Of a stretch of DNA of 40,240 nt, positions 23,949 to 34,569 are shown in pieces. The first letter of the stretch is position 1; every line of letters starts with the position of its first letter. The DNA is from Octopus bimaculoides (Eukaryota): contig NC_068984.1 in NCBI RefSeq assembly GCF_001194135.2, positions 89,831,021-89,871,260 of the forward strand, given 5' to 3'. The notes beneath the pieces were generated by a model that searched no databases, had not been told where the DNA came from, and saw only the letters and a program-made list of their open reading frames with translations. The position numbers were made by a program, and so were the translations under genes.

Positions 23949-23996
23949 ATGAATTCTATTAACATTTGGGTTATTGCAGTCATTTCTTTAATATTG
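23949..23996 (+). CDS. exon 1 coding part: signal peptide n/h region MNSINIWVIAVISLIL
   Basis: ATG at 23949 in context GAAAATG, 16 mostly hydrophobic codons, then a consensus donor TTG|GTAAGT at 23997 (phase 0). It lies just downstream of a TATA/Inr pair. Confidence 0.8.
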
Positions 23997-26900
23997 GTAA
24001 GTTAAGTTTAATCTAATTCTTTTTTTTTTTATGAAGACACAGTGTATGTAAACAAAACAAAATAATGAAGTCCATAATGCAAAAAAAAAAATCGGGAATG
24101 TAATTATATCGGATACTACTTTTCTTATGCTGCAATAGAAGATGGGAAATTTGTAGTTCCTACGTGGCTTGTGGTTGTATGTAGCAGACTACACTTTATT
24201 GCAAGCATATGGACTATTCTTGTCGAAGATAACTTCCTCCAACCAACGTCAGAAACCCTAAAATGGTTTATGGATGCAACTTTTCCCCCTCTGAATAATC
24301 CATTAAAAAATAAACTATGGCAGTGAATGAAATTTGTTCATTCGCTAACGTTTTTCTATCAAATCTAAAATTCTAGAATGTATCTGAAGATGCATAAATG
24401 GAAAGAGATTTTATAATAAATATATTTTAACATACACAACTATAAGTAGAACAATTTTTAAAAGCATGGATAAGTTAGTTACGTCATGGCTGAAATACTA
24501 AAAGTTAACTTATGATAAAGTATTAAATATTGCATTTGTCTATAATTAAATATTTTTGTATATCGATTCGTATATTTCTGTGCCAAAGTACAGATGAATA
24601 ATGCATGCATTTGTGAGTGTGCCTGTACATGCACACTTTCTTATATTTAACAATCAAAATTATATAAATCAATTTCCATGAAGTGTACTTGTTTTTTCCC
24701 CTCCTTTATTATTATAACATGAAACTTGTTTCAGTGTAATACGATAACATAAGCACTAATATCAATTTTCAAAATGGGAATACTATATCGTTTCTATTCA
24801 TCCTTGCATTATAGTATTAAACTGTAAATTTATATTTGTAAGTAAACACTTACATGTGCAATATTTAGCTAAAGCAAAGTAATTAGTATATAATATTTCT
24901 GAAATTTCTGACTAATTTCTGAAATTGAGTTTTCTGAAGTTATTGTTTCAATTACTTCATATTTCTTCTCCGTAAACTAAATAATCTGAAAGAAGCATAA
25001 ACATCTTGTGCAATTCTGTTATTAACTAATGGATTCGCAGAAATTAATTTCTATAATTATCATATTATAGTTATACCTAAATATTTTTACAGCCTCTTAG
25101 ATTTACCAGAATGGAATTATTCTTATTTAATTCTGTCTACCATTTCTCTGATTTATTCAATCTGATTAACTAATTGCAATACTATTCTCCGACAAGTACC
25201 CAAAGCACTGTTGCATTTATATCATTTAGTGAAGCATCAAAAGAAAATGGAGAATTAAAAAATCCTTAAACAAAAAAAGAACAACAAATAAATGGTTTTA
25301 ATTTCGTTTTCTTTTACCTTAAGATATTATATTTTTTCCTCTACCGAAGCAGACTTCCATTTATTTAAACTGCTTTTTCCCTTTAACTTGTAACAAGATG
25401 AGAATTGCAATTTTTAAATTAAAATTGAAAATATCAGACATGTACTATAACATTCGTGTAATGTTAAGACAAGTTGGACGTTCGATGGACATGTGTATAT
25501 AAGTTAGATGTGAAACAGTATGGCATATATGTAGACTTTCAAAACACTATTTACTTATAATACTAAGATATACCATGTCAAATAATGATGAAAAGAATGT
25601 TTTACTGCATAGATAAATGAAGTAAAGATTTGAATATTTAAATATTCATTTATTTGAATAGTTTCTACGATTTACAGTATATTTTCTCACAAATATATGC
25701 TTATCACCTAATTTCGGAACTGGAAATCGACTGCACACCATGCTAACGCACACAATTTGAAATACAATTCGCTTCAGCCAGCTTATTTTATTAATTAGAT
25801 AGTTATACTAGAGACATTTCACATTAGATAGTTATACTAGAGACATTTCAGTCTTAACGCGAGGATCGGTCTGTTGTATTCCATTGAATAATTGCTGAGA
25901 AAAATATTGATGATATTACTAGTTAAATTGCTGTCTGAAATAGGGTTTTCTATATTTGCTCTATTTCTTCACTCTCTTCAGTGTTGTCTCAATGGTATTT
26001 CATAATGGAAAATTCGATCATTTAAACAGATATCTGCTTCAAATTTTAGCACAAGGCCAGAAATTTTAGGAGAGGGGATAAGTCGATTGCATCGATCTCA
26101 GAGCTCAATTGGTACTTATTTTAGCAATCCCGAAAGGATGAACGAAAAAGTCGACCACAGTGGAATTTGAACCCAGAACGTAAAGATGGACGAAATACTG
26201 CTAAGCATTTTGCCCGGCGTGCTAACGATTCCGCCAGTTCACCACATTAATCAATTAACCAAATATCGGTTTCAAAATTTGGCAAAAGACCATCAATTTC
26301 AGGGTAGGGGTAAGTCGATTGCATCGATCCCTGTACTCGACTAGTACTTATTTTATCAACCCCGAAATGTTGAATGGTTAAGTTGACATCGCTAGAATTT
26401 GAACTCAGGTCATAAAAACGGACGAAATACTGCTAAGCACATGGCCTACAGTGCTAACGATTCTGTCAGCTCATCGTCTTGAATTAACGAAATGTGAAGA
26501 AATAAAAATATTTAATATCTTTTATGTCATTTAGTTGTAGATCTAATGAAATAAATTTCTATTTCATTATTTTATCCACAGGCTATATCTAAAGTTATAC
26601 CTAAACATACATCTCCAAAATTTTATATTCAATATTTGCACGTATAATATCTCTCATGTTATATAATCCAATAACTAACAGTTAAACAATTCATTTGTTA
26701 CTAGGTTCAAGTTCATGGTAAACACACCGAGAAAGGTATGTACTGCTTTACTGAATTTAAAATGAAGTTTGACGGTCGTTGTAAAGTGGAAAATATGTAT
26801 AAAAATATGTTTGGTTACATTCTAGAAAACAATAACAACAGATATACTGTCTCATTAATTACTCATATCCGGGAAGTAAAAATTAGTAGGTGCATTTATG

Positions 26901-33500: not shown

Positions 33501-34569
33501 CTGGTAATGCTTCAAGAATCCTGCAAAGAATTCTTGCAGTTCCAAGCAATGCTGATTTTTGTACGTGTTCTACCTAAGTTGGTTAGCTGGCAGAATACTT
33601 AGTATGCCGGATAAAAATTCTTTCCTCTTCACGCTCTGAGTTAAAATTCTTTCGAGTGGACCTTGCCTTTCATTTTTTCGGAGTCGATGAAATGAATACC
33701 AGTTATACACTGGAGTCGACTTAATCGACTAACCCCTTCCCCCCAAATTTCAGGCTATGTGCCTATAGTAGAAAGGATTATTATTATTATTTATAATTTT
33801 TGTCTTATTCAACTCCCCAGAATTATATTAGAGAATAGAACCATGTTAGATGAATTAATACCGAGATGTGTGATTTGAATTTTCATATGTATGAGACCCA
33901 TAAAAGTGTACAAAATATAAATAAGAAAATACGGAATAAAATTTCTCATTTCCTACGAATTACAATGATATTTCCCTTTTACTATTACTTAATAAATATA
34001 GCTTTCTTCTTTTCAAAGGTACTGTGTCGTTTGGATATGACATTCTAACATTGGGAATTTACCGCACCGATATAATTACACAGTTTATACAGACCATGCT
34101 GCCATATACACCATATGGAAGATACAGAACATTCTCTTTTGTTGATTGCCCTCACAGCTATAATCAGCCATTTACAACTTTAATTAATAAAACGAACGCT
34201 GAACTTGGCAAACTTATGAAACCAACATACCCGGGACTAGCTGGTATTGTACGCCATATGGGTAAAGGACTCAATATGCATCCTAATTTATACACAAAGC
34301 AATTAGCTGTTTTATTTATAGATCCATCACTAACTGTTTTAACTGCTGAGTTAATGTCAGAAATAGAGAATCTTAAAAAATTAGGAACAAAAGTATTTTT
34401 AATCAACGTTGGAGATACTATATGGCCAAATGTTCAGACATTGCATTCTATGAGCAGTCAACCGTACAATCATTACATTTACAATATTCCAACCTATAAT
34501 CAGTTATTGTTTATGGCCCACCATTCACCTTGCAGCTTTCAACCGTTATGTAATCAAAAAGTTATCTGA
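23949..34569 (+). CDS. 5-exon gene for a secreted VWA / Thr-rich linker / degenerate VWA protein (462 aa; matrilin/collagen VI-like VWA family, no collagen helix)
   Basis: I joined exons 23949-23996, 26705-26735, 28950-29513, 31672-31866 and 34019-34569 by hand. All junctions are GT-AG with compatible phases (0,1,1,1). Total 48+31+564+195+551=1389 nt, one open frame ending TGA at 34567-34569. The protein starts MNSINIWVIAVISLILVQVHG-KHTEKECTGKAANIIFVMDTSSS. Confidence 0.88.
26031..26480 (-). mobile_element. two head-to-tail copies of tRNA-derived SINE family B (about 26031-26243 and 26263-26480) in intron 1
   Basis: The two units share TAAGTCGATTGCATCGAT, GTACTTATTTTA, GAATTTGAAC (reverse-complement B box) and GGACGAAATACTGCTAAGCA...GTGCTAACGATTC. 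Confidence 0.8.
26705..26735 (+). CDS. exon 2 (31 nt): VQVHG|KHTEK, signal peptide c-region and cleavage site
   Basis: Acceptor TTCATTTGTTACTAG, branch-like ACTAAC at 26674-26679 (about 26 nt upstream), donor AAG|GTATGT at 26736. It is the phase 0 to phase 1 bridge needed to join exon 1 to exon 3, and it completes the signal peptide (V-H-G fits the -3/-1 rule). Confidence 0.75.
27511..28774 (-). mobile_element. full-length (1264 bp) decayed mariner (D,D34D) in intron 2 of the VWA gene
   Basis: TA-flanked TIRs: TA|CGAATGTCGGCTGAAAAGTTCATAGGATGA and TCAGCCTATGAACTTTTCAGCCTACACTCG|TA. Minus-strand motifs FWNVKDIVFIGYL..GHTI, LFHQDNDPAH and YSSDLTPSDYHLFPNMK, with frameshifts. Confidence 0.92.
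28950..29513 (+). CDS. exon 3: von Willebrand factor A domain with intact MIDAS
   Basis: Acceptor TTTTTATTTTCACAG and donor AAG|GTACGT. Translation shows IIFVMDTSSS (DxSxS), VRVGAITFS, GQTNTAAAL (MIDAS T), AIVITDGKS (MIDAS D), VYAIGVG and ELNAIASDP, with flanking Cys (ECTG...KTCK). Confidence 0.95.
29702..30000 (+). mobile_element. tRNA-derived SINE family C in intron 3
   Basis: A box TGGCTTAGTGGTTAG, B box GGTCCGATTCC, then the TTCTTGAACAAATCACT core-like segment. Its 3' part (TTTGATCAC...TCATTTGTG) resembles a relic at about 4425-4480. Confidence 0.65.
30523..30600. repeat. (TG)n microsatellite
   Basis: Direct reading of the sequence. Confidence 0.95.
31672..31866 (+). CDS. exon 4: Thr/Pro-rich mucin-like linker (65 aa)
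   Basis: Acceptor TCTGTTTTAG, donor CAA|GTAAGT at 31867, phase 1-1. Encodes DITTLPPTIPTTTPTTTTVTTPVTTTT...EMPPQQDQS, 32 Thr of 65 residues by my count. Confidence 0.88.
33227..33410 (+). mobile_element. SINE family B copy ending in a (TTA)n tail
   Basis: GTGAGCTGGC..GGGCAAAATGTTTAGCGGCATTTCG..CAAATTCCACCGAGG..AAATAAGTACCAGTTGA..AAAATTTGAAATC ATTATTATTA; the reverse complement of the 26031 units. Confidence 0.75.
33411..33574 (-). mobile_element. short 3' fragment of an R4/Dong-type retrotransposon in intron 4
   Basis: The reverse complement translates VEHVQKSALLGTARILCRILEA, the typical extreme C-terminus of RLE-type ORFs. A short 3' UTR follows and ends at TAATAATAAT. Confidence 0.75.
33581..33792 (+). 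mobile_element. SINE family B-related copy with a (TTA)n tail
   Basis: GTTAGCTGGCAGAAT..TTAGTATGCCGG..CTTGCCTTTCAT..GGAGTCGA..TAATCGACTAACCCC..ATTATTATTATTATT. Confidence 0.7.
34019..34569 (+). CDS. exon 5: degenerate (pseudo) VWA domain and stop
   Basis: Acceptor CTTTCTTCTTTTCAAAG, phase 1. VWA-like elements in register: VSFGYDILTLG (beta1), LAVLFIDPS (beta4), LKKLGTKVFLINVG (beta5), LHSMSSQP, HYIYNIPTYNQLL. TGA at 34567 is followed by AATAAA. Confidence 0.85.

What the first reader, a model, noticed from the sequence alone, without database searches (positions are those of the whole stretch)
23949..34569. Hidden complete gene: secreted VWA / mucin linker / pseudo-VWA protein, a candidate mucus, adhesive or matrix component
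Seen: five exons splice in frame into a 462-aa protein with a clean signal peptide, one canonical metal-binding VWA domain, a roughly 50% Thr spacer and a second, very divergent VWA-like domain. It has no collagen helix, EGF repeats, TM segment or evident GPI signal. Established: VWA domains in matrilins, collagen VI/XII and mussel byssal PTMP1 cross-link matrix proteins, and Thr/Pro-rich tracts are O-glycosylated extended spacers. Inference: a dumbbell-shaped bifunctional secreted glycoprotein that may act in cephalopod skin or sucker mucus, egg capsule or glue. Automated pipelines would probably mislabel it 'collagen/cartilage matrix protein-like'. A TATA+Inr promoter suggests tissue-restricted, strong expression.
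Basis: partly seen in the sequence, partly recalled or inferred. Interest (0 to 1): 0.72.

Follow-up and report, generated by a model that had tools for sequence, protein, structure and literature searches.

The report
Annotated octopus secreted two-VWA matrix protein
The five-exon gene is real and encodes a secreted VWA / threonine-rich linker / degenerate-VWA protein, but it is already annotated letter for letter in Octopus bimaculoides as an uncharacterized protein and is an ordinary member of a mollusc-wide family of VWA matrix proteins.

Summary
Five GT-AG exons on the + strand splice in frame into a 462-aa protein. Both assembly gaps lie in microsatellites inside intron 3 and touch no exon. 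The protein has a hydrophobic N-terminal leader, a VWA domain with a complete MIDAS motif, a 65-residue linker that is 49% Thr, and a C-terminal domain that folds as a VWA domain but lacks three of the five MIDAS residues.

The claim of a "hidden" gene does not hold. The window is Octopus bimaculoides chromosome CM046604.1:89,831,021-89,871,260. The exact 462-aa product is already public as XP_014786423.1 / UniProt A0A0L8FVX7, "uncharacterized protein LOC106880811".

The O. sinensis/O. vulgaris orthologue has the same five exons. dN/dS is 0.09 for the VWA domain, 0.20 for the C-domain and 0.65 for the linker. The gene sits in a conserved tandem cluster of paralogues. The C-terminal domain also occurs at the end of gastropod and bivalve "cartilage matrix protein-like" proteins. 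The best structural match is the mussel byssal protein PTMP1.

The most likely role is a secreted, O-glycosylated cross-linker of extracellular matrix or mucus. The tissue and the ligand are unknown. This is an ordinary finding of low novelty.

The parts
23836..23843 (+). Candidate TATA box (TATAAATA), 113 nt upstream of the ATG
   Evidence: It is identical in O. sinensis. The 260 nt upstream of the ATG are about 95% identical between the species, against 84-90% for the introns. The transcription start site is not known.
23949..23996 (+). Exon 1: ATG and signal-peptide residues 1-16
   Evidence: The donor is GTAAGT. The strongest hydrophobic 19-residue window of the protein starts at residue 1 (Kyte-Doolittle 1.98). 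The orthologue has the same exon.
26705..26735 (+). Exon 2 (31 nt): end of the signal peptide (..VQVHG|K) and start of the mature protein
   Evidence: AG acceptor and GTATGT donor. It is conserved in O. sinensis.
28950..29513 (+). Exon 3 (564 nt): the whole N-terminal VWA domain. The Pfam match covers 28970-29482 and the MIDAS DTSSS motif 28988-29002. The domain is flanked by Cys28 and Cys213.
   Evidence: Pfam PF00092, E = 9.6e-38. D40, S42, S44, T113 and D144 are invariant in 22 family members. dN/dS is 0.09. Paralogues P0003 and P0013 also carry the VWA domain in a single exon-sized block (564 and 579 nt).
29599..29632 (.). Assembly gap 1, inside intron 3
   Evidence: It is flanked by (GT)n. 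O. sinensis has 25 nt of (GT)n between the matching flanks.
30513..30522 (.). Assembly gap 2, inside intron 3
   Evidence: It is followed by (GT)n. O. sinensis has 99 nt of (AT)n/(GT)n between the matching flanks.
31672..31866 (+). Exon 4 (195 nt, symmetrical phase 1-1): Thr/Pro-rich mucin-like linker
   Evidence: The linker is 49% Thr. It shows two indels against O. sinensis and dN/dS of 0.65. Linker length varies from near zero to about 250 residues among paralogues.
34019..34569 (+). Exon 5: C-terminal degenerate VWA domain (34021-34566) and the TGA stop (34567-34569)
   Evidence: The AlphaFold2 model has pLDDT 83 and pTM 0.79. All of the top 50 Foldseek PDB matches are VWA folds. The domain profile matches the integrin alpha-E I domain at E = 9e-4. 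dN/dS is 0.20.
34570..34590 (+). Two candidate polyadenylation signals (AATAAA at 34570-34575 and 34585-34590)
   Evidence: Both are conserved in O. sinensis. Similarity between the species breaks down after about 34665. The use of these signals was not tested.

Best explanation
This is the annotated Octopus bimaculoides gene LOC106880811. It is an intact gene under purifying selection and encodes a secreted protein of about 49 kDa before glycosylation, with a basic pI of 9.4. The N-terminal VWA domain has a complete metal-ion-dependent adhesion site (MIDAS). It most likely binds an acidic residue of a partner protein, such as a collagen or another matrix or mucus component, through a bound divalent cation. 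The Thr/Pro-rich exon most likely carries dense O-glycans and acts as a stiff, hydrated, protease-resistant spacer whose length evolves freely. The C-terminal domain is a VWA fold that has lost three of the five MIDAS residues. It most likely makes a metal-independent contact, either with itself or with a second partner. The whole protein would then work as a two-ended cross-linker in an extracellular matrix or secretion. It belongs to a tandemly duplicated cephalopod gene cluster, which descends from a mollusc-wide family of proteins with two or three VWA domains related to mussel byssal PTMP1.

What is shown: the gene structure, the domains, the state of the MIDAS motifs, the selection pattern, the gene cluster and the taxonomic spread. 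What is inferred: secretion, O-glycosylation, the ligands, the cross-linking role and the tissue.
For: The exact protein is XP_014786423.1, and the window is identical to CM046604.1 over 26,292 compared bases. The O. sinensis orthologue is 90% identical over the full length. Its locus is collinear, and the same five exons there rebuild XP_029634937.1 exactly. dN/dS is 0.09 for the VWA domain, 0.20 for the C-domain, 0.65 for the linker and 0.18 overall, with dS about 0.13, matching intron divergence. The MIDAS residues D40, S42, S44, T113 and D144 are invariant in 22 family members. The N-terminal VWA matches collagen VI alpha-3 (E = 2e-63, summed over several domains) and both VWA domains of PTMP1 (E = 2e-31). 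The C-domain model has pLDDT 83, and its Foldseek hits are all VWA folds, with PTMP1 first. A profile-profile alignment of the N- and C-domains runs end to end (E = 3e-5); it keeps D287 and D381 but has no counterpart of S42, S44 or T113. The C-domain profile finds the C-terminal domains of Patella and Haliotis proteins (E = 5e-21 and 2e-16), and those domains pass the Pfam VWA cut-off (44 and 64 bits). Tandem clusters exist in both species: O. bimaculoides genes at 89.66, 89.80 and 89.855 Mb and O. sinensis genes at 69.38, 69.48 and 69.63 Mb. Contigs of 1.7-2.5 kb from other cephalopod sequencing runs carry full-length uninterrupted ORFs of family members with the same architecture, so the family is transcribed and spliced in this way.
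Against: I found no transcript, proteomic or expression evidence for this particular gene. The only near-identical Logan contig (P0204) reads through into introns 2 and 3, so it is genomic DNA and not cDNA. The signal peptide was judged only from hydrophobicity, the -3/-1 rule and family conservation, because no SignalP run was possible. O-glycosylation, metal binding, the ligands and any oligomeric state are untested. [quoted passage not shown] No paper in the searchable library names this gene or its family.
Confidence: 0.6

Rival explanations
1. It is a matrix protein of a hard or chitinous structure (stylet, beak, radula, statolith or sucker lining), like the VWA-containing shell-matrix proteins Pif and BMSP, and not a soft mucus or connective-tissue cross-linker.
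For: VWA proteins recur in mollusc shell matrices. A published survey counts 111 VWA-domain proteins in O. bimaculoides and places a single-VWA octopus protein in the BMSP subfamily. Relatives of this protein occur in shelled gastropods and bivalves.
Against: No Pfam family other than VWA-type domains reached threshold, so no chitin-binding (CBM_14), laminin-G or acidic low-complexity mineral-binding region was detected. The mature protein is basic, with a pI of 9.4. The Argonaut eggcase matrix study found no Pif or BMSP homologues. Whether this gene is the BMSP-clade member was not checked.
Confidence: 0.15
2. It is a humoral adhesion or immune factor in haemolymph or on epithelia, for example one that clots, agglutinates or binds microbes through the MIDAS site. 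Tandem duplication and the variable linker would then reflect diversification under host-microbe pressure.
For: The family is tandemly expanded and its linkers vary greatly. Structurally, the domains resemble integrin I domains, the anthrax toxin receptor and the Plasmodium TRAP VWA domain, all of which mediate cell or pathogen adhesion.
Against: Both globular domains are under strong purifying selection between the two octopus species (dN/dS 0.09 and 0.20), which does not fit an arms race. One-to-one orthologues are kept as far out as Argonauta (66% identity). The closest sequence matches are matrix proteins, namely collagen VI and PTMP1.
Confidence: 0.1
3. The five-exon model is incomplete or wrong. 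The VWA exon might really splice to other exons, such as collagen-type exons outside the window, or the locus might be a decaying duplicate.
For: No RNA evidence specific to this gene was obtained. One O. vulgaris model (CAI9721490.1, 626 aa) reads through into the next paralogue.
Against: Identical five-exon models exist in three annotations: O. bimaculoides, O. sinensis and O. vulgaris CAI9721491.1. The start codon, all splice sites and the stop codon are conserved. dN/dS is 0.18, with no frameshift or premature stop. Full-length cDNA-like contigs of relatives end with the same C-terminal domain. No G-X-Y run exists anywhere in the window.
Confidence: 0.03

Closest known systems
Mytilus proximal thread matrix protein 1 (PTMP1; PDB 4CN8/4CN9/4CNB)
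   Same: PTMP1 is a mollusc protein of similar size (the solved chain is 454 residues) built from two VWA domains. It is the best Foldseek match of the C-domain (E = 3e-6), and both of its VWA domains match the N-terminal VWA by sequence (total E = 2e-31). From my own knowledge, not tested here: PTMP1 is secreted and binds collagen in the byssal thread.
   Different: Both PTMP1 domains keep a DxSxS motif, visible in the alignments, and a PTMP1 structure with a zinc-occupied MIDAS motif has been solved. Here the second domain lacks S, S and T of the MIDAS. The octopus protein also has a mucin-like exon of about 65 residues between its domains. Octopus makes no byssus.
Gastropod and bivalve "cartilage matrix protein(-like)" proteins with two or three VWA domains (e.g. 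Patella vulgata XP_050403925.2, Haliotis rubra XP_046581489.1)
   Same: These are true homologues over both domains. They show the same order, with one or two MIDAS-type VWA domains followed by a C-terminal VWA with an FxFD start and a degenerate MIDAS. The Patella protein also has a Thr-rich linker between its first two VWA domains.
   Different: Their C-terminal domain is still recognised by Pfam VWA (44-64 bits), whereas the cephalopod one has diverged below the threshold (16 bits). The number of VWA domains also differs. As far as I could find, none of these proteins is functionally characterised.
Vertebrate matrilins and the VWA arrays of collagens VI, XII and XXVIII
   Same: They contain extracellular VWA domains with a MIDAS and a flanking Cys pair, and they act as matrix adaptors. 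Collagen VI alpha-3 is the top PDB sequence match. These are the names that pipelines give to the paralogues.
   Different: The octopus protein has no EGF domain, no C-terminal coiled coil, no FN3 domain and no collagen triple helix. It is therefore neither a matrilin nor a collagen.
PTS (Pro/Thr/Ser) domains of mucins
   Same: The linker has the same composition (49% Thr, 12% Pro), low complexity and rapid length evolution, and it is encoded by its own symmetrical exon.
   Different: It is only 65 residues long. The protein has none of the VWD/C8/TIL or cystine-knot domains that gel-forming mucins use to polymerise.

Membership tests
VWA domain superfamily (Pfam PF00092), N-terminal domain | A profile match above the curated cut-off | tested here: met
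   130.6 bits against a cut-off of 23.8, E = 9.6e-38, residues 34-204.
VWA domain superfamily, N-terminal domain | A complete MIDAS motif (D-x-S-x-S ... T ... D) | tested here: met
   D40, S42, S44, T113 and D144 are present and invariant in 22 family members. Metal binding itself was not tested.
VWA domain superfamily, C-terminal domain | A profile match above the curated cut-off | tested here: not met
   16 bits against 23.8, E = 0.015, and only residues 93-163 of the domain match.
VWA domain superfamily, C-terminal domain | A VWA (Rossmann-like alpha/beta) fold and homology shown through intermediates | tested here: met
   The AlphaFold2 model has pLDDT 83. The top 50 Foldseek PDB hits are all VWA folds, with probability 1.00 and TM-scores of 0.5-0.63. 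The domain profile matches the integrin alpha-E I domain at E = 9e-4. The profile also finds the Patella and Haliotis C-terminal domains, and those pass the Pfam VWA cut-off. The N-domain and C-domain profiles align end to end with E = 3e-5.
VWA domain superfamily, C-terminal domain | A complete MIDAS motif | tested here: not met
   Only the two Asp residues remain (D287 invariant, D381 nearly so). The DxSxS serines and the Thr have no counterpart in any family member.
Matrilins (cartilage matrix protein family) | EGF-like domains and a C-terminal coiled-coil oligomerisation module | tested here: not met
   There is no EGF hit in Pfam at E up to 10. The C-terminus is part of the VWA-like fold plus a short Cys-containing tail.
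Collagens VI, XII and XXVIII | A collagen triple helix (G-X-Y repeats), plus FN3 domains for collagen XII | tested here: not met
   No frame of the 40-kb window has a run of five or more G-X-Y triplets. Pfam gives no Collagen or fn3 hit.
PTMP1-like two-VWA byssal matrix proteins | Two VWA domains in one secreted chain | tested here: met
   Here, however, the second domain lacks a MIDAS and a mucin-like linker separates the two domains.
PTMP1-like two-VWA byssal matrix proteins | Collagen binding | not testable with these tools
   This needs a binding assay.
Gel-forming mucins | VWD-C8-TIL assemblies and a C-terminal cystine knot flanking long PTS domains | tested here: not met
   Only a 65-residue PTS-like stretch is present, with no VWD, C8, TIL or CTCK hits.
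Classically secreted proteins | A cleavable N-terminal signal peptide and no membrane anchor | tested here: inconclusive
   The hydrophobic core lies in residues 1-19 (Kyte-Doolittle 1.98). V and G occupy positions -3 and -1 before K22. No other 19-residue window exceeds 1.51. The C-terminal tail is not hydrophobic (0.06). The leader is present in most family members. No dedicated predictor such as SignalP was available.
Pif/BMSP shell-matrix family | A VWA domain together with chitin-binding (CBM_14) domains | tested here: not met
   No Pfam family other than VWA-type domains reached threshold, so no chitin-binding domain was detected. The family definition is taken from PMC11291548.

The most novel reading that the evidence does not exclude
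The tandem cluster of VWA / mucin-linker / MIDAS-less-VWA genes could encode the main protein scaffold of a cephalopod-specific secretion, such as the sucker lining, skin mucus or the cement and stalk of octopus eggs. In that reading the degenerate C-terminal VWA would act as a metal-independent self-assembly module that has not been described before, and the extra Cys451, seen only in this orthogroup among the 22 aligned members, would give covalent dimers.
Probability: 0.1. Interest if true: 0.45.

Novelty: already known. Interest (0 to 1): 0.18.

Why it matters
It matters little as a discovery. The gene model and its VWA annotation are already public, and the protein belongs to a very large and well-known class; one survey counts 111 VWA-domain proteins in this genome. 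Three modest points do come out of the work. First, the unannotated C-terminal half of this protein and its paralogues is a degenerate VWA domain without a working MIDAS, and it is shared across molluscs. Second, the pipeline names of the paralogues ("collagen alpha-1(XII)/(XXVIII)", "cartilage matrix protein") are misleading, because no collagen or matrilin hallmark is present. Third, the family forms a conserved tandem cluster with a freely evolving mucin-like exon. That makes it a reasonable candidate set for anyone doing proteomics on cephalopod mucus, suckers or egg coats.

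Tried and rejected
- **Structure and library jobs with a spliced first sequence.** I redid it with the exon-5-only sequence.
- **Single-sequence N-domain against the C-domain profile.** This gave only a weak local match (probability 18%). 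The profile-profile comparison was clearer.
- **Searching for transcript evidence.** The 90% cluster partner of the window protein (P0204) turned out to be a genomic contig reading into introns, so it is not cDNA.
- **Tracing sequencing runs to a tissue.** No paper mentions the run accessions of the cDNA-like contigs (SRR6517992, SRR25158149, SRR9970012), so neither tissue nor species could be assigned.
- **Literature on the gene and its family.** Searches for gene, protein and UniProt identifiers found nothing. [quoted passage not shown] The limpet adhesive paper concerns VWD, not VWA. The Argonaut eggcase matrix study found no Pif or BMSP homologues. Searches on egg capsule, oviducal gland and sucker gave nothing relevant. 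The octopus genome paper (PMC4795812) is not held.
- **Exact-product look-ups.** Two paralogue isoforms (P0006, P0007) are not on record.
- **Idea rejected: a second copy of the gene in the window.** tblastn finds only the gene's own exons.
- **Idea rejected: UniProt A0A0L8G8G4 is a truncated model of this gene.** It is the next paralogue downstream.

Full report
**1. The observation.** Joining 23949-23996, 26705-26735, 28950-29513, 31672-31866 and 34019-34569 on the + strand gives 1389 nt. That is 462 codons plus a TGA stop. All four introns start with GT and end with AG. The window has 12 assembly gaps. The two inside the finding (29599-29632 and 30513-30522) both lie in intron 3 (29514-31671) and are bordered by (GT)n runs. 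In the orthologous O. sinensis intron the matching flanks are separated by only 25 nt of (GT)n at the first gap and 99 nt of (AT)n/(GT)n at the second. The gaps are therefore collapsed microsatellites. They cannot hide an exon or disturb the frame. tblastn of the product against the window finds only the gene's own exons.

**2. The gene is real, but it is not hidden.** An exact-sequence look-up finds the 462-aa product in the public collection as XP_014786423.1, "uncharacterized protein LOC106880811 [Octopus bimaculoides]". It is also UniProt A0A0L8FVX7, "VWFA domain-containing protein". Its gene lies at CM046604.1:89,854,969-89,865,589 in assembly GCA_001194135.2. The window matches that record over 26,292 compared bases with no mismatch, gaps included. 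The window is therefore CM046604.1:89,831,021-89,871,260.

**3. Cross-species support.** The best homologue is XP_029634937.1 / CAI9721491.1 from O. sinensis / O. vulgaris. It is 458 aa and 90% identical over the full length. Its locus (L001) is collinear with the window at 86-91% DNA identity across introns and flanks. The same five exons, with the same splice sites, rebuild that protein exactly. Nei-Gojobori estimates between the two species are as follows:

| Region | dN/dS |
|---|---|
| N-terminal VWA domain | 0.09 |
| C-terminal domain | 0.20 |
| Linker (also carries two indels) | 0.65 |
| Whole protein | 0.18 |

dS is about 0.13, which agrees with intron divergence of 10-16%. Both globular domains are thus under purifying selection, while the linker is only loosely constrained. 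Argonauta hians has a 66%-identical orthologue.

**4. Domain anatomy.**

- *Leader.* Residues 1-21 (MNSINIWVIAVISLILVQVHG) hold the only strongly hydrophobic stretch of the protein, with V and G at positions -3 and -1 before K22. There is no later transmembrane-like window and no hydrophobic C-terminal tail. No dedicated signal-peptide predictor was available, so secretion remains a well-founded inference.
- *N-terminal VWA.* Residues 34-204 match Pfam VWA with E = 9.6e-38. The MIDAS residues D40, S42, S44, T113 and D144, and the flanking Cys28 and Cys213, are invariant across 22 family members.
- *Linker.* Residues 215-279 are 49% Thr and 68% Thr+Ser+Pro. They are encoded by a single symmetrical phase 1-1 exon. 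Among paralogues this region ranges from almost nothing to about 250 residues.
- *C-terminal domain.* Residues 280-462 are sub-threshold for Pfam VWA (16 bits). An AlphaFold2 model built from a 16-sequence family alignment has pLDDT 83 and pTM 0.79, with alternating strands and helices. Its 50 best Foldseek matches in the PDB are all VWA folds: PTMP1, collagen VI, vWF A1/A3, integrin I domains, TRAP and ANTXR. All have probability 1.00 and TM-scores of 0.5-0.63. The family profile also hits the integrin alpha-E and alpha-M I domains and the Rpn10 VWA domain by sequence, with E from 9e-4 (alpha-E) to 0.04-0.05 (alpha-M, Rpn10). A profile-profile alignment of the N- and C-domains runs end to end with E = 3e-5. 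That alignment keeps the two MIDAS aspartates (D287, D381) but gives no counterpart for the two serines or the threonine, and this holds in every family member.

The domain is a VWA fold that cannot form a normal MIDAS.

**5. Family and distribution.** A library-wide search with the C-domain profile finds 226 proteins at E <= 1e-3. Full-length matches sit at the C-terminus of other O. bimaculoides and Argonauta proteins. They also sit at the C-terminus of Patella vulgata "cartilage matrix protein" (VWA, Thr-rich linker, VWA, C-domain) and Haliotis rubra "cartilage matrix protein-like" (VWA, C-domain). Scallop, Solemya, Mytilus coruscus and Sinanodonta proteins match in the same way. In Patella and Haliotis the C-terminal domain still passes the Pfam VWA cut-off (44 and 64 bits). 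This provides the bridge of homology and shows the architecture is mollusc-wide. The cephalopod copies are simply the most diverged.

Within octopuses the genes are tandem, all in the same orientation:

| Species and chromosome | Gene | Start position |
|---|---|---|
| O. bimaculoides CM046604.1 | P0008 | 89.66 Mb |
| O. bimaculoides CM046604.1 | P0013 | 89.80 Mb |
| O. bimaculoides CM046604.1 | LOC106880811 (this gene) | 89.855 Mb |
| O. sinensis CM016862.1 | P0009 | 69.38 Mb |
| O. sinensis CM016862.1 | P0003 | 69.48 Mb |
| O. sinensis CM016862.1 | P0001 (orthologue of this gene) | 69.63 Mb |

These positions come for O. bimaculoides and for O. sinensis. In the four paralogues checked the C-domain sits in one terminal exon-sized block. 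In P0003 and P0013 the VWA domain also sits in a single block. Contigs of 1.7-2.5 kb from three sequencing runs carry uninterrupted full-length ORFs of family members with untranslated flanks. Given the multi-kb introns of the genomic copies, these must be cDNA. The family is therefore expressed with this architecture. I found no such contig for LOC106880811 itself. Its only near-identical Logan partner reads into introns 2 and 3 and is genomic.

**6. What it most likely does.** The closest solved relatives by sequence are collagen VI alpha-3 and mussel byssal PTMP1, both of whose VWA domains match. PTMP1 is also the best structural match of the C-domain. From general knowledge of VWA proteins, not tested here, MIDAS-bearing VWA domains bind an acidic side chain of a ligand through a bound cation, and PTMP1 and collagen VI act as matrix adaptors.

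My best reading is a secreted two-ended cross-linker. It would have a cation-dependent binding head, an O-glycosylated spacer, and a cation-independent VWA-like tail that binds a second partner or itself. The mature protein has five cysteines. Cys28/Cys213 match the usual VWA end-to-end pair, and Cys323 and the C-terminal Cys457 are conserved in most members. Cys451 occurs only in this orthogroup among the 22 aligned members. An unpaired Cys could give a covalent dimer, but that is speculation.

The tissue is unknown. The mucus, sucker and egg-capsule ideas are neither supported nor excluded. The rivals are a matrix protein of a hard structure, a humoral adhesion or immune factor, and a wrong gene model. 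They are weighed in their own sections of this report. The last of them is nearly excluded.

**7. Promoter and 3' end.** A TATAAATA at 23836-23843, 113 nt upstream of the ATG, is conserved. The 260 nt upstream of the ATG are about 95% identical between the species, somewhat above the intron level. A TCAGT-like motif near 23913 is changed in O. sinensis. Without RNA data the start site and any Inr element cannot be judged. Two AATAAA motifs directly after the stop codon are conserved.

**8. Comparison with known families.** The protein is not a collagen: there is no G-X-Y run in the window, and no Collagen or fn3 hit. It is not a matrilin, as it has no EGF domain and no coiled coil. It is not a gel-forming mucin, as it has no VWD, C8, TIL or CK domains. 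It is not Pif/BMSP, as no chitin-binding domain was detected. It works most like PTMP1 and belongs with the uncharacterised molluscan "cartilage matrix protein-like" proteins with two or three VWA domains. It is not borne out for this gene.

**9. Verdict.** The novelty is low, because this is an already annotated and ordinary, though functionally uncharacterised, secreted VWA matrix protein. No paper in the searchable library names the gene or describes the family. The small additions are therefore the VWA nature of the C-terminal half, its mollusc-wide spread and the conserved tandem cluster.

Noticed in passing
O. vulgaris CAI9721490.1 (P0050) and O. bimaculoides A0A0L8G8G4 (P0051); outside the window, downstream of 40240: An O. 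vulgaris model of 626 aa fuses the orthologue of this gene, cut inside its C-domain, to the next VWA paralogue downstream, so it is probably a chimeric prediction. The O. bimaculoides model of that neighbour (228 aa) looks truncated, because an Argonauta relative (P0068, 362 aa) continues into a C-domain with no Thr-rich linker.
   Followed up: partly
window 27480-28780, minus strand (intron 2): This stretch looks like a decayed transposon. It includes a 115-aa ORF (27576-27923, minus strand) that gives no Pfam hit at E <= 0.01. From memory it resembles the C-terminal part of a mariner-type transposase. The insertion is shared with O. sinensis, because intron 2 aligns along its whole length.
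   Followed up: partly
window 26017-26231 and 26250-26472 (intron 1); similar elements near 29700-29800, 33230-33400, 33590-33780 and 34700-34800: There are repeated short interspersed elements of about 200 nt. The two copies in intron 1 are adjacent and cross-match each other's positions in the O. sinensis locus at 75-78% identity. One copy begins just after the conserved 3' end of the gene.
   Followed up: no
window 8955-10929, + strand: These are fragments of a reverse-transcriptase ORF from a non-LTR retroelement (Pfam RVT_1, E = 7e-6, below the cut-off). They are interrupted by the assembly gap at 9256-9810.
   Followed up: partly
window 36031-36372, minus strand: This is a fragment of a retroelement integrase core (Pfam rve, E = 5e-12, above the cut-off), about 1.5 kb downstream of the gene. 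ORFs without any hit lie nearby at 35632-35943 and 37798-38115.
   Followed up: partly
window 12521-12850, + strand: This ORF has a weak match to the HTH domain of the Mos1 transposase (HTH_48, E = 8e-4, below the cut-off). It is probably another mariner-type remnant.
   Followed up: no
whole window: Twelve runs of N total 5,570 bases, or 14% of the window. The four run edges I looked at (the two gaps in the finding) border (GT)n/(AT)n microsatellites. The chromosome-level assembly GCA_001194135.2 still carries the gaps between 13949 and 40240 with the same lengths.
   Followed up: partly
window 34019-34569 (residue Cys451): This orthogroup (O. bimaculoides, O. sinensis/vulgaris and Argonauta) has SPC[ST]F where most other family members have P-F-x-F. 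That gives the mature protein an odd number of cysteines (five).
   Followed up: no
window 14686-23102: The 9 kb upstream of the gene aligns with O. sinensis at 86-88% identity and contains no convincing protein-coding ORF. The ORFs at 20744-21635 (minus strand) give no Pfam hit.
   Followed up: partly
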